Shown piece after piece: positions 2,726-32,881 of a stretch of DNA of 64,000 bases (position 1 is the stretch's first letter; each line of letters begins with the position of its first letter). A program made the position numbers and the translations under genes. The stretch lies in the IMG/VR virus record IMGVR_UViG_3300009093_000034, positions 124,001 through 188,000 of that record. One strand, given 5' to 3'. Below the pieces are notes generated by a model. The model searched no databases. It worked only from the letters and a program-made list of their open reading frames with translations, and had not been told where the DNA came from.

Positions 2726-3772
2726 ATGAACAAGCTTTTTACGATTCTTTCTGTGGTTCTCCTGGCTGCTTTTGCCAGTTGTACCATGCCTGGTTCGTCC
2801 ACCAAGACTTACCAGAAGATCCCTGTGATCGCCGGAGCTAAGGCCCCCACCCACACTTCTCGTAACATCTCTCTTGGAGATGGAGAAGCCGTAGCTCCTG
2901 AGCTGTTCTCGATCTCACCAGTAGTGACTGGTTGGGTTGGAAGCTCCACTCCCGTCACCGATGGTGAAGTCTTGACTTACACTTACTTTGGTGCTACGTT
3001 GAAGATGGTCGTTCACATGGACGTCCCGGTTGTAGGTGCCATCACCTATACTACTGACACTTTGGATGTCAGCGGAAATCCCACAGGTGTCTATGATACT
3101 ACTGTTGGGGCAGGCTTTGATGCTAACGCGTCCTTCTCCGAAGATGGTACCACCTACCCTGGTTCTGTAGGAGTAACCACGCTGAATAGCGTGTGGAATG
3201 CTTCTAACACCAGTCATGTGACTGCTGTTCTTAACGTGGGAGGAACTAGTTTCTCAATCGATCAGAAACTTTACATGAGTTTCTGGAACACGTCGACAAG
3301 TCCTGCTAAGCTGTATTGGGTGTACTACATCCACATGGTTATTCCTTCAGGAACCATCGATGGTAACGGCGGATTTACTGCGGCTGGTGCTGAATACGTT
3401 GATGAGAATGCTTACAACGTCAGCACTGAACCTGGAGTTTCTGGTCCGTTTGATTCTAGCTTGCTTTCCGCTCAGCTTTCCTACTCGAATAGTGTCTTCC
3501 TTATTAAGGCTACTCCTAATAAGGTTGGTGTACTCTTCAAGTACGGAACTCAGACTCCGGTTTCGCCTCCTACTTCCTCCATCATTACAGATGGTGTAGC
3601 TGGAGATCCTACGAGTGCTACCTTGGCATCTGCTGCTCCTACCTATACTCCTACAGATTCCTCTTGGGGATCTGGAACCTTGTACTACTACAGCACTCCG
3701 TATAAGTGGATCAAGGGTAGTTCGGATGGTCAGCCTGGTACCGATCAGGATAAGTTCAACGGTCTTCAGTAA
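2726..3772 (+). CDS. Ser/Thr-rich lipoprotein
   Basis: MNKLFTILSVVLLAAFASC signal peptide plus lipobox Cys; RBS AAGAGG. Confidence 0.75.
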   Translation: MNKLFTILSVVLLAAFASCTMPGSSTKTYQKIPVIAGAKAPTHTSRNISLGDGEAVAPELFSISPVVTGWVGSSTPVTDGEVLTYTYFGATLKMVVHMDVPVVGAITYTTDTLDVSGNPTGVYDTTVGAGFDANASFSEDGTTYPGSVGVTTLNSVWNASNTSHVTAVLNVGGTSFSIDQKLYMSFWNTSTSPAKLYWVYYIHMVIPSGTIDGNGGFTAAGAEYVDENAYNVSTEPGVSGPFDSSLLSAQLSYSNSVFLIKATPNKVGVLFKYGTQTPVSPPTSSIITDGVAGDPTSATLASAAPTYTPTDSSWGSGTLYYYSTPYKWIKGSSDGQPGTDQDKFNGLQ

Positions 3773-3791
3773 GACTCAAGTTTGATCTACG

Positions 3792-3821
3792 AAATCCGGC
3801 CTTCGGGCCGGATTTTTTTTT
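3792..3821 (+). terminator. Rho-independent terminator
   Basis: AAATCCGGCC-TTCG-GGCCGGATTT followed by T run. Confidence 0.9.
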
Positions 3822-3871
3822 GACAAAAAGTTTCTATTTGACTAATTACTTGAGATATTGATATTACACAA

Positions 3872-4022
3872 CAAATCGCGGTGGTTGTAACTCATACTTC
3901 GAACAAACTGTAAATTTGTCTATTGTAGGTGAGAATCCTACCGTCCCCACCAAACTTATTGTATACTACAGTCAGCTTGGTGGGGATGATGAAAAATCAG
4001 AGTTCCTAAATATTCCCGATTT
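3872..4022 (+). ncRNA. Circularly permuted tRNA-mimic RNA 1 (YrlA/Y-RNA-like) carrying a GUA anticodon-like arm
   Basis: T arm 3925-3941; acceptor 3942-3953 pairs with downstream 3977-3988; ends pair (AAATCG..GG / CC.CGATTT). Confidence 0.6.
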
Positions 4023-4896: not shown

Positions 4897-4979
4897 GGGT
4901 AGGTGTCTCGAGCGGCAAAGAGGGCGGACTGTAAATCCGTTGCGTTAACGCTTCGTGGGTTCGAGTCCCACCCTGCCCA
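4897..4979 (+). tRNA. tRNA-Tyr(GTA)
   Basis: Canonical type II cloverleaf, loop CT-GTA-AA. Confidence 0.9.
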
Positions 4980-5089
4980 TAAACACGGGCCGAAAGGCGG
5001 TCAAGCTCAAGCGTGTCTAAAAATCTTGAGTAGCAGGTTGGCTATGCTTCGTAAGGAACCAACTAGGGCAGACGCCGAAAAGGTCGAAC

Positions 5090-6028: not shown

Positions 6029-6090
6029 AGGAGTGCTTGATGCACTTGATTAGAAATTGTGTCAATGACACCATTTAAGTTTTGAAAGAA

Positions 6091-6255
6091 AAAGAAAGCG
6101 TCGGTGGTTAGACTTACTTCGGATTATCAACCGCGTGGTGTGGGTTCGATTCCCATAGCTCTCCCTAAAACATCTTTGAGATAGGGTTTTTTAGGGAGAG
6201 CTTAGCTTAATGGATAGAGCACGTAACTTAGTTTGACCGATTATTACCTTTCTTT
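6091..6255 (+). ncRNA. Circularly permuted tRNA-mimic RNA 2 (YrlA/Y-RNA-like)
   Basis: T arm 6140-6156, then 14-bp acceptor 6157-6170/6189-6202 closed by a hairpin, then D arm 6203-6220; 5' and 3' ends pair in place of the anticodon arm. Confidence 0.75.
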
Positions 6256-6259
6256 ATAT

Positions 6260-6330
6260 AGACCCTTAGTGTAACGGAAACATGTGAAGCCTTGAACTTC
6301 ATGTCGCGGGTTCAACTCCTGCAGGGTCTA
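6260..6330 (+). tRNA. tRNA-Gln(TTG)
   Basis: TGAAG-CC-TTG-AA-CTTCA arm, T arm, acceptor AGACCCT/AGGGTCT. Confidence 0.85.
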
Positions 6331-7805: not shown

Positions 7806-8273
7806 ATGGAACAACTATCAGAATCCTTAGGCGTCGGCTTCTACAGAGTAGGTCGAATCACCATCCCAGTAAGAATGGCATCACATGCCACAGATCGCCT
7901 GGAACAAAGGTTTCCTGGTGTTGAGATCTCCCAAGTTAAAGAGATATTGAATAAGGGTGTTCAGCAGATCGCCCAACCAAGTGGTCACGTTGAACTTGGG
8001 CAATATTTGATCATCGATCAAAATGATGGTGTGATGTTGCCTATCAAGATTCAGAAGAATGATCGACCTGGGTATGAGAGACAAACCATGGGATTCATCC
8101 CAACGGTTATGGATTGGAAACTTCAATCAGACTCTGATTACCCTGAAGATCTCTTAGACAAGTACCACTTCTTGAAGAAGATCTACGTAGAAAGTGCTTC
8201 ACGATGGGAGGTTCCCAATCTGTCGAAGACAGGAACCTTTAATGGAGAACCTTGTACCATCATCTACGTCTAA
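7806..8273 (+). CDS. Hypothetical protein
   Basis: 155-aa ORF in operon. Confidence 0.6.
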   Translation: MEQLSESLGVGFYRVGRITIPVRMASHATDRLEQRFPGVEISQVKEILNKGVQQIAQPSGHVELGQYLIIDQNDGVMLPIKIQKNDRPGYERQTMGFIPTVMDWKLQSDSDYPEDLLDKYHFLKKIYVESASRWEVPNLSKTGTFNGEPCTIIYV

Positions 8274-8284
8274 AGGAATTTGAC

Positions 8285-9196
8285 ATGAGTGACACCTTAA
8301 CACTAGAGATCCTAGTCGGTGCCCCTGCTTCTGGTAAGTCCACTTACGCAGAAGAAAAACTAAAGACTGAGAAGAACTGGGTGAGGATCAACAAAGATAC
8401 CTTGAGAACCCAACTTCGTCAGGCCAAGAAAGATTTTACCGAGCGTGAGCTCAACAGTATTGAAGACATTCACATTGAGGCTGCGCTCAAAGCGGGATCA
8501 AGCGTGATCGTTGACGACACCAACTTGAATCCTTTCCATGTCAAAGATCGTCTACGACCTTTGGGACGGAAGTACGGAGCCAGAGTTCTTGTTAACACTG
8601 AGTTTCTTAAGGTTCCTGTGGAAGAACTGATTTCTCGAGACAAGAGACGAAAGAACTCTGTTGGTGCAGATGTCATCAACGACATGGTCGACAGGTTCTA
8701 TGCTACTTGGCTTAGGAACGCCACTCCTTGGTTGGATACAATCAAGGAAAACAAAGAGAAGACTCCTGTTTATCTCTTTGACTTGGACGGTACCTTGGCC
8801 TTCGCTACAGAGCGAGGTTGGTACGAGGACAAGTTGGCAGGAACGGACACTCCTAACATTCCTGTCATGGGAATCTTGAAGAGTCTTCTTCGCTCTGTGA
8901 GAGTCATCTTTGTTTCTGGTCGAGAAGATAAGTCTTGGCAAGTCACGTGGGATTGGCTCATTAAGCACAGTGAAGTAGGTTTTGACACGTGGGATTCTGG
9001 TCAACCTATGCTCTTGATGAGAAAGACGGGTGACGAGCGTTCTGATGACGTAGTCAAGGCTGAGATCTATAACGAGCAGATCAAGGACAACTTCAATGTT
9101 CTTGGGATCTTCGATGATCGACCTAAGGTCGTTCGAATGTGGAAGTCTCTTGGCTTGTTTGTGTTCGATTGTTACCAATCTGACCAAGAGTTCTAA
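8285..9196 (+). CDS. pseT: Polynucleotide 5'-kinase/3'-phosphatase (T4 PseT-like)
   Basis: P-loop GAPASGKST, RINKDTLR, HAD motif FDLDGT, FDDRPKVV. Confidence 0.93.
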   Translation: MSDTLTLEILVGAPASGKSTYAEEKLKTEKNWVRINKDTLRTQLRQAKKDFTERELNSIEDIHIEAALKAGSSVIVDDTNLNPFHVKDRLRPLGRKYGARVLVNTEFLKVPVEELISRDKRRKNSVGADVINDMVDRFYATWLRNATPWLDTIKENKEKTPVYLFDLDGTLAFATERGWYEDKLAGTDTPNIPVMGILKSLLRSVRVIFVSGREDKSWQVTWDWLIKHSEVGFDTWDSGQPMLLMRKTGDERSDDVVKAEIYNEQIKDNFNVLGIFDDRPKVVRMWKSLGLFVFDCYQSDQEF

Positions 9197-12903: not shown

Positions 12904-13923
12904 ATGGATATCAAGATCATCGGTTGTGGCGGAGCTTTCTCCGAAGACGGTTATTTATTTCACCAGTCTTTTTTGATCAGTGAAGGTGGAGAGAACCTTC
13001 TATTTGATATGGGCAAGGACGTTTGGCCTTGGGCTATGAAGAAGCAAGGCTTGGGTGTTAATGACATCCATCAGGTCTTGATCACTCACCGTCATGACGA
13101 TCACATCGGTTCATTGGGAACTTTTGGTCTCAAGAGATACAATTGGTTTGAGAAACCTATTCACTGGAAAGACTCAAAGAGAGATTACGCTCCTACCCTG
13201 ATTTACTCCATGGACCTTCAAGATGGTCTTTGGGAGTCTCTTAGAGGTAACCTTGAAACCAATGAAGGTTTCGTAGGTTCTTTGGAAACGTTCTTCAAGT
13301 TGAAGCCTATCAAGGAAAACGAGCACTGGGATTTCCACGGTTGGGATCTTCAATTGGTTCGCCAAGTCCATGTCATGGCCGGAAACTCTTTGATGAGTAC
13401 TCATGGTTTGTTCCTGGAGAAGGGTGATCACAGAATCTTCCTGACCGGTGACTGTCAGTTCTTCCAGCCCAAACAGGTTATCTGGTTCTACAACCGAGCT
13501 ACCTTCATCATCACAGACAACGAAACTGTAGGATCCAACTTCCTTTTCCAAGAAGGAACTGAAGTCTACGACGTAACCATCGATGGAAAGAAGGTTACCA
13601 AGCTTTGGCCTACTCTTCTTGAAGACCCTGATGGAATGAAGGTCATGGAACTAATGGCCCAGGATTTCACTCCCTACAAGTGGGAAGTCTTGAAATTCTC
13701 TTCAGGTGTTCACTCGACCTATCCTGAATTGGCAGGTTATCCTTCCGCCAATGCTACAAGGCTTGCTCCTGAGATCAAGAAAAAGATGCACCTTTCTCAC
13801 TATGGTGACCACGTTCCTCAGAACAAGGATGCCTTTGGCAATGATCTTGACTGGGAAGCTCAAGCTAAGAAAGACGGCTTTGCTGGATTCGTCAAGCCTG
13901 GACAGGTCTTTCATTTCGAGTAA
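12904..13923 (+). CDS. MBL-fold metallohydrolase, Apyc1-like cyclic-nucleotide phosphodiesterase (alternative: RNase Z-like)
   Basis: IGCGGAFS, ITHRHDDHIG (HxHxDH), TGDCQF, SGVH, HYGD. Confidence 0.8.
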   Translation: MDIKIIGCGGAFSEDGYLFHQSFLISEGGENLLFDMGKDVWPWAMKKQGLGVNDIHQVLITHRHDDHIGSLGTFGLKRYNWFEKPIHWKDSKRDYAPTLIYSMDLQDGLWESLRGNLETNEGFVGSLETFFKLKPIKENEHWDFHGWDLQLVRQVHVMAGNSLMSTHGLFLEKGDHRIFLTGDCQFFQPKQVIWFYNRATFIITDNETVGSNFLFQEGTEVYDVTIDGKKVTKLWPTLLEDPDGMKVMELMAQDFTPYKWEVLKFSSGVHSTYPELAGYPSANATRLAPEIKKKMHLSHYGDHVPQNKDAFGNDLDWEAQAKKDGFAGFVKPGQVFHFE

Positions 13924-16202: not shown

Positions 16203-16325
16203 GTTCTCTTGAACAGCGGAACGGCACCTGCAGAAGGCTGGTACGATGTCGGATAGTACCTAAGTGTTGCTGGACTGGCACGCGGCTCGCAAGCCGAGGA
16301 AGAGGTTCGAGTCCTCTAGGGAACA
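16203..16325 (+). ncRNA. tRNA-shelled RNA with expanded D arm
   Basis: Acceptor GTTCTCT/AGGGAAC, perfect T arm, ~60-nt branched D region. Confidence 0.6.
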
Positions 16326-20715: not shown

Positions 20716-20787
20716 AACAGGATAGTGTTTAACGGTAGCGCGGCGGCCTTCGGGACGAAAGTAGTGGTTCGAATCCACTTCCTGGGC
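20716..20787 (+). pseudogene. Degenerate tRNA-Pro(CGG)-like
   Basis: Intact T arm and D loop, 5-bp acceptor, broken anticodon stem around TT-CGG-GA. Confidence 0.5.
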
Positions 20788-20994
20788 AGAAAAGATAGTT
20801 CGGTTAACGGTGTTGGTCTTTACTACTGTCGGGATCCTCTCCCTTATGAGTGTAAAGAGCTGATCCGACCAGGCGAGCAGTGCGAGAAGGAAAAACAGGC
20901 GTTACAGAGATGGATGTGACGTCAATGCCTGATCATCGCGTCGCGTACTTGAGGGACAATAACCTGACAAAACCCTCAGGATCTACTTTTTCAC

Positions 20995-21068
20995 AGGTCA
21001 ATCGTCTAAGTTAGGACGCAGGAGCTTCCGTGCCACCCTGAGTATGGGTTCAAGTCCCATGAGACCTA
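20995..21068 (+). pseudogene. Degenerate tRNA (Gly-TCC-like) with 14-nt anticodon loop
   Basis: D arm TCGTCTAAGTTAGGAC, perfect T arm, CAGG/CCTG stem. Confidence 0.5.
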
Positions 21069-21226
21069 AACGGAACAGGTCGGTTAATAACGACGTTGAA
21101 GAATAGTCCTTCACGCCAGCTTGCTGGAAGGGTATTAAGGGCGAGTAAGCAACGGAGTAGGCCAGCGGACGAATATCCGCCAATGGAGGTAATCAACCCT
21201 CCCCTATAAGTTCCACTTTTTATATT

Positions 21227-22677: not shown

Positions 22678-22748
22678 TCCTGCTCTTCAAGGGAAGGTTC
22701 ACCTTAAGTGCACTTAGGTGATGGCCGGTTCGATTCCGGAGGCGGGAG
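22678..22748 (+). pseudogene. Atypical tRNA-like element with extended anticodon stem (TGCA loop)
   Basis: TCCTGCT/GGCGGGA, T arm, CACCT..AGGTG enclosing 11 nt. Confidence 0.5.
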
Positions 22749-22753
22749 TCTTT

Positions 22754-25815: not shown

Positions 25816-26032
25816 AAAGGTGTGGTGGAAGTCCGCTAGTAGATTGCTACTAGGCCCATGTGAATGGCCATTTGTATGGGATTGGGAAACAAAGACACAA
25901 GCTAGGTCGGGGCAAGACGGCCCATGTCAGAGGTTAAACTCTCTATCAACGGAGAGATCCTAGCTGCTACCTTGGTACGAGTATATCTTGGCGGGAAGTC
26001 ATAGCGTTCAGGTTCGAGACCTGACACCTTTT
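25816..26032 (+). ncRNA. tRNA-shelled RNA with tmRNA-like topology but non-Ala acceptor
   Basis: AAAGGTG/CACCTTT, T arm TCAGG-TTCGAGA-CCTGA, CCGC/GCGG helix enclosing ~155 structured nt. Confidence 0.6.
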
Positions 26033-28216: not shown

Positions 28217-28314
28217 AGGCGTCTTCTGGACTGATTGGAAACGGGTTCGATTCCCGTTGCGCCTAAAAACTTTCCCTCACTCGTACGAGATGAGGCGACC
28301 TCAATTTAAGGAGG
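28217..28314 (+). ncRNA. tRNA/Y-RNA-like element in the TROVE leader
   Basis: Perfect T arm 28241-28257; CGCCT can pair with 28218 or 28293 AGGCG; CCTC/GAGG hairpin covers the RBS. Confidence 0.45.
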
Positions 28315-28320
28315 TTGTCT

Positions 28321-29889
28321 ATGTCTAGAATGGCAAACAACCCCAAGGCTGCTACTGCAGCTAAGACCATGAGGAACATTCCTCAGGCAGATACTTTCAA
28401 CAAGGCAGGAGGACGAGCATATTCCAAGTCGGCTAAGGTCGAGCTTGCGGATCTCTTGTTCTCAAACTTCTTGTCCGGAGACACTTACCGAAAGGAAAGT
28501 GAAGTCTCCAAGAGGATCGAGGAGCTTGCTTCTCAGATCGAAGACAAGGAGTTCTTGGCCAAGGCCGCTCTTTACACTCGTAATGAGCTTGGCATGAGGA
28601 CCATGAGCCATCTGTTGGCAGGTGAGATCGCTTCCAAGAACTACGCTTCTGGCTCCGGCTGGGGACGTACCTTCTTCGATGCAATCGTCTACCGTGTCGA
28701 CGACATGGCTGAGATCCTTGGTTACTTCCTCGGAAAGGACCACAAAGCAATCCCTAACTCCCTAAAGTCTGGCTTCTCGTAAGCCTTCGATCGTTTCGAC
28801 GCCTACCAGTTGGCCAAGTATCGTGGTGACAGCAACGCTGTAAAGCTTGTTGACATTGTTCGACTTGTCCACCCGAAGGGAAACGAAAAGAACAAGACTG
28901 CTCTTGAGCAACTTGTTAAGGGAACCCTAAGAAACACCAAGACTTGGGAGGCTAAGGTCTCCGCAGCAGGTCAGAAGGCAACTTCCAAGGAAGCTGTCGC
29001 TGCTACCGCTGAGGCTTGGGAAGACCTTCTTAAGGAGAACAAGCTTGGTTACCTTGCTTTGATTCGTAACTTGACGAACATCGCCAACTCTGTTGATGAT
29101 GCTACGTTTGAGACGGCTCTGGCTCAGGTGATCGATGAGAAGTCTGTAAAGACCTCTCTAGTTCTTCCTTTCCAACTCTACATCGCTGCAAAGCAAGTAG
29201 AGAACGAGGGAAGGATCAAGAATCACAGCAGAATGTCAAAGGTGATCGACGCGCTGACCGCAGCCATCGACGTTTCTTTGTCCAACGTTCCTAAGCTCGA
29301 GGGCAAGACTCTCGTTGCAGTGGACATCTCTGGATCAATGGACTCTCGTCTATCAGCCATGGGTCAAGCTCGTGTTGTTGACGTAGCAACTCTCTTCGGT
29401 GTTGTCTTGGCTAAGGCTAACGATGCTGATTTGGTTCGCTTCAACACCAGTGCTTCCTACTCTGTTGTTCCTAAGTCTAGGTCTACTCTTGACTCTGTCA
29501 AGAGCTTGGCACAGACCGGTGGTGGTACTGCCTTCGAGTCCATCATGTACTTGATCAACCAGTCACAGACTGTCTACGATAGGATCTTGGTTCTATCTGA
29601 CATGCAGTCTTGGTCAGGAAAGACCGGAGGAGACTTCGCTCGCCTTGTCCAAGAGTACAGAAACAACAAGAAGCGTCCTAACATGACCTTCCTTTCGTGG
29701 GACCTCCACGGAGGAACCTCTCACCAGGTTCCTGAGTCTGATCCTCGTTCCATCGTCCTAGGAGGATGGAGTGACAAGATCTTCGACATCTTGGCAGAGA
29801 CCGAGACCGATCGAAACGCTCTAGTGAAGACCATCGAAGAGTACGAGATCAAGGTTCCTACCAAGGAACGAGCTCGTAAGACTGCGTAA
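28321..29889 (+). CDS. rsr: Ro60/TROVE-vWA RNA-binding protein interrupted by one in-frame TAA (28780-28782)
   Basis: NKAGGRAY, YTRNELGMRT, *AFDRFDAYQLAKYR continues in frame, LVHPK, TWE, ALIRNL, vWA VDISGSM and GGT..SDMQ. Confidence 0.88.
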
Positions 29890-30665: not shown

Positions 30666-31067
30666 ATGGAACCTTTTACTGACTCAGTAATCAAATATGT
30701 AGTGTATCACGGGTCTACTGATTCAATAAAAAAGTTTGATTCTACGTTCCCAGATCAAGCATTTCCTGCTCTTTATTTTTCTAGAACATTCGAAAAAGCT
30801 GAAGAATATACTCGTTCAGCTAAGAATCAATTAAAGTCTCATAAGACATTACCTCATTATGTCTATGCTTGTTTCATAGATATGAGAGAACCTCTTGAGC
30901 TTCCATCAAGACAAACGTATTTTATTGATCAAAAAAGAGTAGACCTTATTACAAGTCTTGGATTTGATGGGCTTATTGGGAAAGATGAAAAAAATGAAAT
31001 TGAAGAATTTGTTTTGTTCGATCCCTCAAAAGTAAAAATTCTAAATAGAACATTAATAAAAGGTTAA
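30666..31067 (+). CDS. ADP-ribosyltransferase-fold protein (PolyVal-ART-like)
   Basis: VYHGS..F..ALYFS..AEEY..GFDGLI..EFVLFDPSKVKI; AT-rich codons. Confidence 0.6.
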   Translation: MEPFTDSVIKYVVYHGSTDSIKKFDSTFPDQAFPALYFSRTFEKAEEYTRSAKNQLKSHKTLPHYVYACFIDMREPLELPSRQTYFIDQKRVDLITSLGFDGLIGKDEKNEIEEFVLFDPSKVKILNRTLIKG

Positions 31068-31936: not shown

Positions 31937-32881
31937 ATGCGTAAAGACGTCCTCTTGTCTCGCGACGCCTTCCGCAAGGCTGTCTTTGATCGAGACCACA
32001 ACACATGCGTATTCTGTTCTCTTCCTGCAGTAGATGCTCACCACATCATGGAGCGAAAGCTCTGGCCTGATGGTGGCTACTATTTGAACAATGGTGCCTC
32101 CGTCTGCGAACAGCATCACTGGGATTGTGAGAACTCCATCATCTCTGTTGAACAAGTCAGAAAGGCTTGTAACATCATCGACATCATTCTTCCTCCTTAC
32201 TTTTCTGAGAATCAAATCTACGATAAGTGGGGAAATCAGAAGCTCACGACTGAAGAAGCCGGAGCTATCAAGTACCCTAGAACTTATCACTTCCCTTGGT
32301 CCCAAAATCTCATCAACGACGATCGAATGTTGGAGTCTACTTCTCAGTTCGAACTCAACCACGTGATCGCTACGGTCAAGATGGATGGTGAAAACACGAC
32401 CATGACTAGAGATGCTTGTCACGCAAGGTCTCTTGATAGTGGAGCTCATCCTTCTAGAACTTGGGTCAGATCTTTTTGGGGTTCTCTCAAACACAACATT
32501 CCAGAAGGTTGGAGAGTTTGTGGAGAAAATCTTTACGCAAAACACTCAATCCTTTATACTGATCTCACCAGCTATTTCCAAGGCTTATCAATCTGGAATG
32601 ACAAGAACATTTGTCTGTCCTGGAAAGAGACCAAAGAATGGTTTGAACTTCTTGGCATTCAACCTGTCCAAGAGATCTACGATGGCATGTACTACGAAAA
32701 AGGCATCAAGGATCTTTGGGACCCAACAAAAGGTTGGGAAGGCTACGTAGTTCGGTTCGCAGAGGAATTTCCTATGAGAGATTTCAATCTCAAGGTAGGA
32801 AAGTTTGTTAGAAAAGGCCATGTTCAAACTGATGAACATTGGATGCAACAAGCTCTGACACCTAATAAACTCCAGGCCTAA
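31937..32881 (+). CDS. HNH endonuclease-RNA ligase fusion
   Basis: N-term CVFC..DAHHI..LCxxHH; C-term KYPRTYHFPWS, VKMDGENTT, CGENLY, EGYVVR, KFVR. Confidence 0.85.
   Translation: MRKDVLLSRDAFRKAVFDRDHNTCVFCSLPAVDAHHIMERKLWPDGGYYLNNGASVCEQHHWDCENSIISVEQVRKACNIIDIILPPYFSENQIYDKWGNQKLTTEEAGAIKYPRTYHFPWSQNLINDDRMLESTSQFELNHVIATVKMDGENTTMTRDACHARSLDSGAHPSRTWVRSFWGSLKHNIPEGWRVCGENLYAKHSILYTDLTSYFQGLSIWNDKNICLSWKETKEWFELLGIQPVQEIYDGMYYEKGIKDLWDPTKGWEGYVVRFAEEFPMRDFNLKVGKFVRKGHVQTDEHWMQQALTPNKLQA

What the first reader, a model, noticed from the sequence alone, without database searches (positions are those of the whole stretch)
6091..6255. Circularly permuted tRNA mimic (T arm, closed acceptor, D arm): YrlA-type Y RNA far from the Ro60 gene
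The order is reversed relative to tRNA: a perfect T arm (6140-6156) precedes a 14-bp acceptor closed by a hairpin (6157-6202), then a canonical D arm (6203-6220). The two ends pair (GGTTAGAC/GTTTGACC, AAAGAAA/TTTCTTT) in place of the anticodon arm. This matches the described architecture of bacterial YrlA Y RNAs, and a Ro60 gene lies 22 kb away. A permuted pre-tRNA is the alternative reading.
Basis: partly seen in the sequence, partly recalled or inferred. Interest (0 to 1): 0.82.

Follow-up and report, generated by a model that had tools for sequence, protein, structure and literature searches.

The report
Phage YrlA-type tRNA-like Y RNA
The flagged 165-base stretch is a real tRNA-shaped non-coding RNA gene of the known YrlA/Y RNA kind, the RNA partner of Ro60 proteins, carried by a 306-kb phage; it is unusual only in lying inside a tRNA gene array 22 kb from the phage's Ro60 gene.

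Summary

Rfam's YrlA model gives only 21.7 bits against a cut-off of 69.

The support comes from relatives:
- A pattern scan found about 100 viral and 70 bacterial elements with the same permuted layout.
- Where a Ro60 gene lies in the same fetched locus (47 viral, 43 bacterial elements), it is always on the same strand. It is usually within about 1 kb downstream of the RNA.
- A covariance model built only from 38 Ro60-linked phage elements, with the window left out, hits window 6083-6262 at 82 bits (E 1e-16). This is the sole strong hit in 64 kb.
- The window forms 27 of the 28 consensus base pairs.
- The family structure covaries strongly: 92% of cells are paired, and the covariation score is 0.72 against 0.19 for shuffles.

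The window's Ro60 gene (28321-29889) is real but carries an in-frame TAA stop. The element directly abuts tRNA-Gln.

A permuted pre-tRNA is very unlikely.

This is a new member of a known kind and of moderate interest. No expression data were available.

The parts
6091..6098 (+). Outer helix, 5' strand (AAAGAAAG); pairs with 6248-6255.
   Evidence: Minimum-energy fold. The flank duplex has z = -2.4 against shuffles. An outer helix is present in 27 of 39 family members at z < -2.
6100..6107 (+). GUCGGUGG, a degenerate version of the GNCGAAN0-1G motif thought to bind Ro60. C6102-G6104 lie in an internal loop.
   Evidence: Sequence and fold. It aligns with G[CU]G-NAG or GCCG[AG]AG of Ro60-linked relatives. 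The motif is defined in PMC4201824.
6105..6114 (+). Closing helix (equivalent to the anticodon stem), 5' strand; pairs with 6230-6239.
   Evidence: Six modelled pairs are all standard in the window. This helix covaries in the family.
6114..6117 (+). UUAC, the conserved YUAY motif that precedes the V arm in YrlA RNAs.
   Evidence: It is conserved as (G)UUAY in the family. Described in PMC4201824; the conserved UA forms a kink in the crystal structure (10.1101/312249).
6118..6135 (+). V arm: UUCGG, an 8-nt loop, then CCGCG. Four of its five pairs are standard; U6119-C6134 is a mismatch.
   Evidence: The V stem covaries in the family.
6136..6139 (+). Variable-loop-like UGGU. U6139 takes the place of residue 48, the Levitt partner of A15 (6210).
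   Evidence: The family consensus is AGGUU. The A15:U48 or G15:C48 covariation is noted in PMC4201824.
6140..6156 (+). T arm: 5 bp and the loop UUCGAUU.
6157..6202 (+). Closed acceptor stem: 14 perfect base pairs capped by a small hairpin. There is no free CCA end.
   Evidence: Long acceptor variants recur in the family (L014, L204, L168, L179) and are mentioned in 10.1101/312249.
6203..6220 (+). U8-A9 linker and D arm (GCUU-AAUGGAUA-GAGC), with A14, A15, G18 and G19 present.
6221..6229 (+). Linker ACGUAACUU. Relatives have RCGUAAAA here. GUAA (6223-6226) could pair with UUAC (6114-6117).
   Evidence: The GUAA-UUAC pairing is an inference and could not be tested by covariation, because both sides are conserved.
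6230..6239 (+). Closing helix, 3' strand.
6240..6247 (+). 3' side of the internal loop (AUUAUU) followed by AC. It matches the CG-NUUAUUC motif of the Ro60-adjacent relatives L157, L223, L094 and L219.
6248..6255 (+). Outer helix, 3' strand (CUUUCUUU).
6260..6330 (+). tRNA-Gln(UUG), starting 4 nt after the element. RNase P cleavage at its 5' end would create the Y RNA 3' end (an inference).
   Evidence: A tRNA also follows within 0-13 nt in L070 (two copies), L062 and L014.
28321..29889 (+). Ro60 (TROVE plus vWA) gene, same strand, 22.1 kb downstream. It is interrupted by an in-frame TAA at 28780-28782.
28218..28263 (+). A possible second Ro60-associated RNA: a tRNA-like minihelix 58 nt upstream of the Ro60 start codon. 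It has a 5-bp acceptor-like stem, a stem-loop and a perfect T arm, but no D arm.
   Evidence: This is weak: 15 bits, and the fold z-score is only -1.1.

Best explanation
The element is a phage-encoded YrlA-type Y RNA of roughly 165-175 nt.

Its centre is a tRNA-like module in circularly permuted order: V arm, variable loop, T arm, an acceptor stem closed into a hairpin, U8-A9 and D arm. Its two ends pair to form the stem that takes the place of the anticodon stem. Further out lies an internal loop (5' GUCGG, 3' AUUAUU) flanked by a second helix. In Y RNAs this stem-loop-stem is the Ro60-binding module.

Shown here:
- the anatomy of the element;
- membership of a large covarying family;
- that family's tight, same-strand linkage to Ro60 genes.

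Inferred:
- The RNA is transcribed with the surrounding tRNA array. Its 3' end is released when RNase P cuts the 5' end of tRNA-Gln at 6259/6260.
- It binds the phage Ro60 (28321-29889) through the internal-loop stem.
- Its tRNA-like elbow recruits or gates a partner. In characterised systems this partner is the host exoribonuclease PNPase.
- It therefore contributes to RNA surveillance or repair during infection, alongside the phage's polynucleotide kinase-phosphatase, RNA ligase and CCA-adding enzyme.
For: - Anatomy and fold stability.
- Rfam YrlA is the best non-tRNA match and aligns over the full model length in the same module order.
- About 100 viral elements share the layout. Ro60 is in the same locus for 47 of them, always on the same strand, and the RNA is mostly 70-1000 nt upstream.
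- Among window-type elements with at least 3 kb of sequence on each side, 18 of 24 have a Ro60 gene in the locus.
- In bacterial genomes, 43 of 70 such elements have Ro60 within a locus of 8 kb or less, all on the same strand.
- Ro60-adjacent relatives match Rfam YrlA at E 4e-6 to 3e-3.
- Family structure: 89-92% of cells are paired, and the covariation score is 0.64-0.72 against 0.19 for shuffles and at most 0.16 for slid controls.
- Model R1, built without the window, scores it at 82 bits, E 1e-16, over the full length. This lies within the 57-134 bit range of the family's full-length matches and above hits that lie on ordinary tRNA genes (about 44 bits or less).
- The window forms 27 of 28 consensus pairs.
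- Its nearest full-length relatives (L137, L219, L094) are all Ro60-adjacent, and they share its internal-loop motifs.
- Ro60 is confirmed in the window.
- The RNA-repair gene context is confirmed.
- Published precedent exists for phage Ro60 and Y RNA, including in jumbo phages (PMC4201824, PMC12135203, PMC7824862).
Against: - The Rfam gathering score is not reached: 21.7 against 69.
- The 5' motif is GUCGGUGG rather than GNCGAA(N)G.
- The element is 22.1 kb from Ro60, whereas published YrlA genes are nearly all within 4 kb.
- The window's Ro60 reading frame carries an in-frame TAA, and TAA is this phage's commonest stop codon. The partner protein may therefore be truncated or inactive.
- No RNA-seq run could be listed, so expression, RNA ends and Ro60 binding are all untested.
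Confidence: 0.8

Rival explanations
1. The element is a tRNA mimic that works without Ro60. It would be kept in the tRNA operon for another purpose: as a decoy or sponge for host tRNA-targeting nucleases or tRNA-binding enzymes, or as a processing or stability element for the polycistronic tRNA transcript. The Ro60 link would be ancestral only.
For: - The element sits in a tRNA array 22 kb from Ro60.
- The Ro60 gene has an in-frame stop.
- 6 of 24 window-type relatives with at least 3 kb of flank on each side have no Ro60 in the locus. A sister subfamily with a CAGCAA motif never does (0 of 19).
- The D and T stems of YrlA RNAs are unusually conserved, which has been read as a binding site for an unknown tRNA-binding factor (10.1101/312249).
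Against: - The window element keeps the stem-internal loop-stem module and the loop motifs of its Ro60-adjacent relatives.
- It belongs to the Ro60-linked subfamily, not the CAGCAA one.
- A Ro60 gene is present on the same strand of the same genome.
Confidence: 0.12
2. The element is a permuted pre-tRNA gene. The transcript would be cut at the acceptor by RNase P and RNase Z, and its ends joined, to give a normal decoding tRNA.
For: - The 3' half precedes the 5' half, and the first 7 bp of the acceptor are tRNA-like.
- The phage encodes an RNA ligase, a kinase-phosphatase and a CCA-adding enzyme.
Against: - There is no anticodon loop at the junction. The ends form at least 18 bp of helix with a conserved internal loop.
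- There is no bulge-helix-bulge motif.
- The acceptor helix runs straight through the would-be RNase P site for 7 more base pairs, and residues 73-76 read CCUA.
- The V loop is 8 nt.
- The family is linked to Ro60 and has closed 8-bp acceptors.
- ARAGORN and the tRNA model do not call it.
Confidence: 0.02
3. The element is a non-functional relic of two adjacent tRNA genes: the 3' part of one fused to the 5' part of the next.
For: - It lies in a tRNA array.
- The V arm, variable loop and T arm score against the anticodon arm, variable loop and T arm of ordinary tRNAs.
- A dimeric-tRNA origin of YrlA has been proposed (10.1101/312249).
Against: - 27 of 28 family pairs are intact.
- The 14-bp acceptor is perfect.
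- The flanking helices and loop motifs are conserved with distant relatives.
- Covariation across the family is strong.
- The sequence is identical in a second sample.
Confidence: 0.03

Closest known systems
YrlA (Y RNA-like A) of bacteria and phages: Chen et al. 2014 (PMC4201824), Wang et al. 2018 (10.1101/312249), Rfam RF02553
   Same: - Same module order: V, T arm, closed acceptor, U-A, D arm.
- The 5' and 3' ends pair in place of the anticodon stem.
- The YUAY motif is present.
- The tRNA tertiary-contact residues are present.
- It is on the same strand as a Ro60 gene.
- The variable, sometimes long, acceptor hairpin is a known feature.
   Different: - It is below Rfam's cut-off. That model is narrower than the published family: bacterial relatives in Streptosporangium, Nonomuraea, Dokdonia and others also miss it.
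- The motif is GUCGGUGG instead of GNCGAA(N)G.
- It is 22 kb from Ro60 rather than within 4 kb, and it is embedded in a tRNA array.
- The T loop is fully canonical (UUCGAUU).
Mycobacterium smegmatis YrlA (PMC4201824)
   Same: A tRNA-like module whose first 7 acceptor pairs look like a tRNA acceptor. The genome also encodes, or has access to, a CCA-adding activity.
   Different: - The M. smegmatis RNA has a 7-bp acceptor. It is cut by RNase P and gains a CCA tail.
- Here the helix continues for 14 bp across the would-be cleavage site, so cleavage is doubtful and untested.
Thermus phage phiLo Yrl1/Yrl2 with phiRo60 (PMC12135203; PDB 9KOP, 9L5Y)
   Same: A phage-encoded Ro60 together with stem-internal loop-stem Y RNA-like RNAs. 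phiLo Ro60 is the closest solved structure to the window's Ro60 (E 2.6e-14).
   Different: The phiLo Yrls lie directly upstream of Ro60, carry a CGAA loop motif and are not described as tRNA-like.
Deinococcus radiodurans Yrn1/Yrn2
   Same: Ro60-bound Y RNAs with a T-arm-like module. They are made from a polycistronic precursor that includes a tRNA.
   Different: Yrn1 lacks a full D arm, and both genes lie next to rsr.
Permuted tRNA genes (Cyanidioschyzon merolae type) and two-piece (permuted) tmRNA genes
   Same: The T arm and the 3' acceptor strand precede the 5' acceptor strand in the gene.
   Different: - Those RNAs are cut at the acceptor and end up with a free CCA.
- Permuted tRNAs also regain an anticodon loop through a bulge-helix-bulge junction.
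- tmRNA has a tag reading frame and a degenerate D region.
- None of these features is present here.

Membership tests
YrlA-type tRNA-like Y RNA | Module order T arm, closed acceptor-like hairpin, U-A, D arm, with the 5' and 3' ends paired in place of the anticodon arm | tested here: met
   The Rfam YrlA alignment covers model positions 1-114 in this order. R1 gives a full-length match.
YrlA-type tRNA-like Y RNA | tRNA tertiary-contact residues conserved: U8, A14, the 15:48 Levitt pair, G18, G19, U54, U55, C56, A58, G53-C61 | tested here: met
   Read: U6203, A6209, A6210 with U6139, G6212, G6213, and the T loop UUCGAUU with G6144-C6152.
YrlA-type tRNA-like Y RNA | Conserved YUAY before the V region | tested here: met
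   UUAC at 6114-6117; it aligns with the family's (G)UUAY.
YrlA-type tRNA-like Y RNA | GNCGAAN0-1G motif near the 5' end (the putative Ro60 contact) | tested here: inconclusive
   The window has GUCGGUGG at 6100-6107. G-N-C-G is present, but AA is replaced by GU. Ro60-linked relatives also vary at these positions (GCCGGAG, GUCGGAC, GCGUAG).
YrlA-type tRNA-like Y RNA | Encoded on the same strand as a Ro60/TROVE gene and within about 4 kb of it | tested here: not met
   The strand is the same, but the distance is 22.1 kb. No R1-type element lies nearer to Ro60. There is only a weak tRNA-like minihelix at 28218-28263.
YrlA-type tRNA-like Y RNA | Reaches the Rfam RF02553 gathering score | tested here: not met
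   21.7 bits against 69. Ro60-adjacent phage and bacterial relatives also fail it, so the threshold is narrower than the published family.
YrlA-type tRNA-like Y RNA | Homology to elements shown to be genomically linked to Ro60 | tested here: met
   Model R1, built from 38 Ro60-linked elements with the window excluded, gives 82 bits, E 1e-16. The window forms 27 of 28 pairs.
YrlA-type tRNA-like Y RNA | Bound by Ro60/Rsr in vivo or in vitro; modified by TruB or DusA | not testable with these tools
   This needs biochemistry. No RNA run was listed.
Permuted tRNA gene | After processing the ends give a complete 7-nt anticodon loop; a bulge-helix-bulge or equivalent junction at the termini | tested here: not met
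   The ends form a 10-bp helix, an internal loop and then a further 10 bp (GU/AC plus an 8-bp outer helix). There is no anticodon loop and no bulge-helix-bulge.
Permuted tRNA gene | A single-stranded linker between acceptor 3' end (discriminator, then CCA or a trailer) and 5' end that RNase P and RNase Z can remove | tested here: not met
   The acceptor helix continues uninterrupted for 14 bp, and residues 73-76 read CCUA.
Two-piece (permuted) tmRNA | A tag reading frame and pseudoknots after a degenerate D region; a match to tmRNA models | tested here: not met
   Only the T arm matches tmRNA (12 bits). The tmRNA_permuted model gives no hit. The D arm is canonical, and tRNA-Gln follows 40 nt later.
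Canonical tRNA | Detected by ARAGORN or by the Rfam tRNA model | tested here: not met
   Neither calls 6091-6255.

The most novel reading that the evidence does not exclude
In this jumbo phage the YrlA RNA has been uncoupled from Ro60. Three things point that way: the Ro60 gene carries a stop codon, the RNA lies in the tRNA operon, and its acceptor is a long hairpin.

On this reading the RNA is matured like a tRNA. It might be cut within the extended acceptor and given a CCA tail by the phage's own nucleotidyltransferase. The product would be a two-piece tRNA-like molecule. Its role would be as a decoy or sensor in the conflict between host tRNA-cleaving defences and the phage's RNA-repair enzymes (kinase-phosphatase and RNA ligase).
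Probability: 0.08. Interest if true: 0.65.

Novelty: new member of a known kind. Interest (0 to 1): 0.36.

Why it matters
Ro60/Y RNA particles are conserved from bacteria to humans, and their function is still debated. Phage versions are only beginning to be studied.

This element adds a jumbo-phage YrlA that is embedded in, and probably matured with, a tRNA array next to RNA-repair genes. That arrangement fits the proposal that YrlA arose from dimeric tRNA transcripts.

The more practical result is that Rfam's curated YrlA threshold misses this element. It also misses the Ro60-linked relatives that were checked (phage loci, bacterial loci), out of roughly 170 such elements found here in phages and bacteria. 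Y RNAs are therefore probably under-annotated, and a broader model would change that.

Tried and rejected
- **Rfam at gathering threshold, whole window:** only tRNAs.
- **Close DNA relatives:** megablast and blastn of the region against GenBank phages found nothing.
- **Nearest Ro60 homologues in IMG/VR (L003-L006):** no YrlA at E ≤ 0.1. Model R1 gave only a 37-bit hit in L004, on an odd tRNA-like gene.
- **Closest GenBank phage Ro60 (LR745206.1, 43.5% identity):** no R1 hit and no tRNA within ±20 kb. The rest of that 635-kb record was not scanned.
- **MAFFT alignment of five relatives:** too poor in the flanks to model. It was replaced by a 38-sequence alignment.
- **Expression:** no RNA run was listed. 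Laying DNA contigs of four other runs gave no coverage of 6070-6203 and no useful variants.
- **Covariation in the long acceptor:** the metagenome scan for variants found only the source contig and one identical copy.
- **Independent check of the Ro60 stop:** an exact-product look-up of the N-terminal Ro60 piece found nothing on record.
- **Stop-codon recoding as the explanation for the Ro60 stop:** rejected. TAA ends 38 of 62 long reading frames, and the only suppressor tRNA found reads TAG.
- **Conserved protein neighbour of the CAGCAA subfamily:** none found.

Full report
**Source and setting.** The window is part of IMG/VR contig IMGVR_UViG_3300009093_000034, a 305,833-bp phage contig from a rhizosphere metagenome. 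It carries 20 tRNA genes by ARAGORN, 16 of them confirmed by Rfam, all on the + strand. It also encodes a CCA-adding enzyme (39354-40742), a polynucleotide kinase-phosphatase (8252-9196), an RNA ligase (31937-32881) and a Ro60 homologue.

**The observation.**
- GUGGG-UUCGAUU-CCCAU (6140-6156) is a canonical T arm.
- AGCUCUCCCUAAAA (6157-6170) pairs perfectly with UUUUAGGGAGAGCU (6189-6202), closed by an 18-nt cap.
- U6203-A6204 and GCUU-AAUGGAUA-GAGC (6205-6220) are a canonical 8-9 linker and D arm.
- The flanks pair as a 10-bp helix (6105-6114 with 6230-6239).
- Beyond an internal loop (CGG opposite AUUAUU) comes GU/AC plus AAAGAAAG/CUUUCUUU (6091-6098 with 6248-6255).

The fold is -57.2 kcal/mol with z = -3.97. 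The residues that make tRNA tertiary contacts are all in place: U8, A14, A15 with U48, G18, G19, U54, U55, C56 and A58. Neither tRNA finder calls the region.

Rfam's YrlA model (RF02553) is the best non-tRNA match. It aligns over its whole length in the same module order, but scores only 21.7 bits against a gathering score of 69. E is 0.024 for the 341 bases searched, which would not be significant over the whole window. Taken alone, this test neither confirms nor refutes the assignment.

**Relatives.** I scanned IMG/VR with two patterns that encode a T loop, a 20-50 nt spacer and a D arm. I kept hits in which the 7 nt after the T stem pair with the 7 nt before U8.
- Fifteen of the first 126 hits had 7 of 7 pairs, against about 0.1 expected by chance.
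- In total about 100 viral elements share the layout.
- tblastn with Ro60 queries found a Ro60 gene in the same fetched locus for 47 of them, always on the same strand. The RNA usually lies 70-1000 nt upstream, and in a few cases just 3' of the gene.
- The same pattern in one-genome-per-species bacterial and archaeal contigs gave 70 closed-acceptor elements. Forty-three have Ro60 within a locus of 8 kb or less, again all on the same strand.
- The taxa include Streptosporangium, a genus whose YrlA was described by Chen et al..
- The Ro60-adjacent phage elements match Rfam YrlA at 32-42 bits, E 4e-6 to 3e-3, still below the cut-off.
- The bacterial relatives score 70-107 bits with my model but also miss Rfam's cut-off.

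Rfam's family is therefore narrower than the YrlA of the literature.

**An independent model.**
- I aligned 38 non-redundant Ro60-linked phage elements, leaving the window out (A3).
- RNAalifold recovered the closing helix, T, acceptor and D stems.
- With the V stem added, 89% of cells pair. The covariation score is 0.64, against 0.19 for shuffles and at most 0.16 for slid partners.
- One caveat applies: the first 7 acceptor pairs were a selection criterion, but the other helices were not.
- Covariance model R1, built from this alignment, finds window 6083-6262 (+) at 82 bits, E 1e-16, over the full length. It is the only strong hit in 64 kb; the next full-length hit scores 18 bits.
- Family members not used in training score 57-117 bits over the full model length. 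Hits that lie on ordinary tRNA genes score about 44 bits or less.
- In the 93-sequence model alignment, 92% of cells pair and the covariation score is 0.72. The window forms 27 of 28 consensus pairs; only U6119-C6134 fails, and the family median is 25.
- Its nearest full-length relatives are L137, L219 and L094 (56-60% identity). All three are Ro60-adjacent.

**The Ro60-binding module.**
- Published YrlA RNAs have GNCGAAN0-1G near the 5' end, and YUAY before the V region.
- Phage phiLo Yrls have a CGAA motif in an internal bulge between two stems.
- The window has UUAC at 6114-6117.
- It has GUCGGUGG at 6100-6107, with CGG lying in the internal loop.
- Ro60-linked relatives show GCCGAAG, GCCGGAG, GUCGGAC, GCGUAG and similar at the aligned place.
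- One subclade shares the 3' loop strand CG-NUUAUUC, which in the window is CGAUUAUUAC.
- An outer helix beyond the loop is present in 27 of 39 members at z < -2, including the window.

The stem-loop-stem module is therefore conserved, but the exact published motif is not. Binding is inferred, not shown.

**The partner protein.**
- 28321-29889 encodes a Ro60.
- The C-terminal 368 residues hit TROVE (2.4e-14) and vWA_Ro60.
- Both pieces match Thermus phage phiLo Ro60 (9KOP) collinearly.
- The frame is broken by TAA at 28780-28782.
- The stop aligns with a variable residue, Glu in L003, inside a conserved block, and homology continues after it.
- TAA is the commonest stop codon in the window, and the only suppressor tRNA reads TAG. 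Recoding is therefore not an explanation.
- The stop could be a recent nonsense mutation, an assembly error or a split gene. I could not check the reads.

**Genomic context and maturation (inferred).**
- A strong terminator (3791-3816) and a promoter-like site (3838-3865) precede the tRNA array. No terminator separates the element from tRNA-Gln, which starts at 6260, 4 nt after the outer helix.
- In L070 (two copies), L062 and L014, family members inside tRNA arrays are likewise followed by a tRNA within 0-13 nt.
- This suggests that RNase P cleavage of the downstream tRNA forms the 3' end. It parallels the Yrn2-tRNA-Yrn1 precursor of D. radiodurans.
- Whether the long acceptor is itself cut, as in M. 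smegmatis YrlA, is doubtful, because the helix runs 14 bp across the would-be site.

**Rivals.**
- *Permuted pre-tRNA.* This fails on anatomy. There is no anticodon loop, no bulge-helix-bulge, no single-stranded linker and no CCA. The family also has closed 8-bp acceptors and a Ro60 linkage.
- *Dead tandem-tRNA relic.* This is contradicted by the intact pairs, the conserved flanks and an identical copy in a second sample.
- *Ro60-independent role.* This cannot be excluded, given the distance, the stop codon and the Ro60-less relatives.

**Comparison with what is known.**
- Phage Ro60 genes and Y RNA-like RNAs are already described. Examples are mycobacteriophages, Caulobacter phage CcrColossus, Bacillus phage G and Thermus phage phiLo. 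A TROVE protein with a tRNA-like partner is also noted in jumbo phages.
- Variable and long acceptor hairpins are known.
- The element is therefore a new, divergent member of a known kind.
- What is new is mostly context: placement in a tRNA array 22 kb from Ro60, next to RNA-repair genes.
- The V arm, variable loop and T arm also score against the anticodon arm, variable loop and T arm of ordinary tRNAs. This fits the proposed dimeric-tRNA origin of YrlA.

**Verdict.** Confidence that this is a YrlA-family RNA is about 0.9. Confidence that it works with the phage Ro60 as described is about 0.8, falling towards 0.6 if the stop codon is real. Interest is moderate.

Noticed in passing
window 28780-28782: The Ro60 gene is interrupted by an in-frame TAA, with homology to other Ro60 proteins on both sides. 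TAA is the commonest stop codon in this phage, so this is a nonsense mutation, an assembly error or a split gene rather than recoding.
   Followed up: partly
window 28218-28263 (+): A tRNA-like minihelix lies 58 nt upstream of the Ro60 start codon. It has a 5-bp acceptor-like stem (GGCGU/GCGCC), a stem-loop and a perfect T arm (ACGGG-UUCGAUU-CCCGU), but no D arm. It may be a second, YrlB-like Ro60 RNA. A stable hairpin follows at about 28273-28296.
   Followed up: partly
window 35775-35849 (+): An amber-suppressor-type tRNA with anticodon CUA, which ARAGORN labels 'Pyl'; it scores 68.6 bits with the tRNA model. TAG ends only 5 of 62 long reading frames.
   Followed up: no
window 8252-9196, 31937-32881, 39354-40742, 30666-31067, 12904-13923: An RNA-repair and conflict gene set: polynucleotide kinase-phosphatase, RNA ligase, CCA-adding enzyme, an ADP-ribosyltransferase (ART-PolyVal) and a metallo-beta-lactamase-fold protein. 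The last resembles the anti-Pycsar protein Apyc1 but scores below the Pfam cut-off.
   Followed up: partly
window about 20990-21070 and 22680-22750; also 16301-16317, 20762-20779, 26007-26024: T-arm-like sequences lie outside any called tRNA. Some sit within degenerate cloverleaf-like folds. They may be pseudo-tRNAs or further non-canonical tRNA-like RNAs.
   Followed up: no
L041 6310-6468 and 6763-6916; L128 5364-5447; L131 10471-10554; L062, L133, L145, L156, L175, L201, L210, L212, L213: A sister subfamily of permuted tRNA-like elements. Members carry a conserved (A)CAGCAA motif in a 5'-strand bulge in place of the GNCG-type loop. None of 19 has a Ro60 gene in its locus (0 of 11 with at least 3 kb on both sides). 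No shared protein neighbour was found. Their partner and function are unknown.
   Followed up: partly
L088 1388-1560 (-): A T arm and 3' acceptor strand are followed by a 4-nt cap, then a 5' acceptor strand, a D arm and a complete anticodon arm (anticodon UAU). The ends pair as CCAUAG/CUAUGG. This looks more like a true permuted tRNA than like a Y RNA.
   Followed up: no
L004 9230-9302 (+): Directly upstream of a Ro60 gene lies a non-permuted tRNA-like gene. Its anticodon arm is a 7-bp stem with a GUAA tetraloop, and ARAGORN calls it 'tRNA-???'. It appears to be another form of Ro60-linked tRNA mimic.
   Followed up: no
L057, L142, L152, L160, L147, L193, L225, L167, L194, L166; L255 (Dokdonia): Many Ro60 loci carry two or three tandem copies of the YrlA-type element.
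   Followed up: no
L238 (Neisseria MAG) 3622-3777, 3894-4008, 4917-5009: One locus holds an Rfam-type YrlA (99 bits) flanked by two elements of the more tRNA-like type modelled here. Rfam RF02553 therefore captures only part of the published YrlA family.
   Followed up: partly
L313 3660-3960 (-), metagenome contig Ga0207695_10001581: The element and the adjacent tRNA-Gln are identical over 297 aligned bases in a 37-kb contig from a different sample, so the same phage occurs elsewhere.
   Followed up: yes
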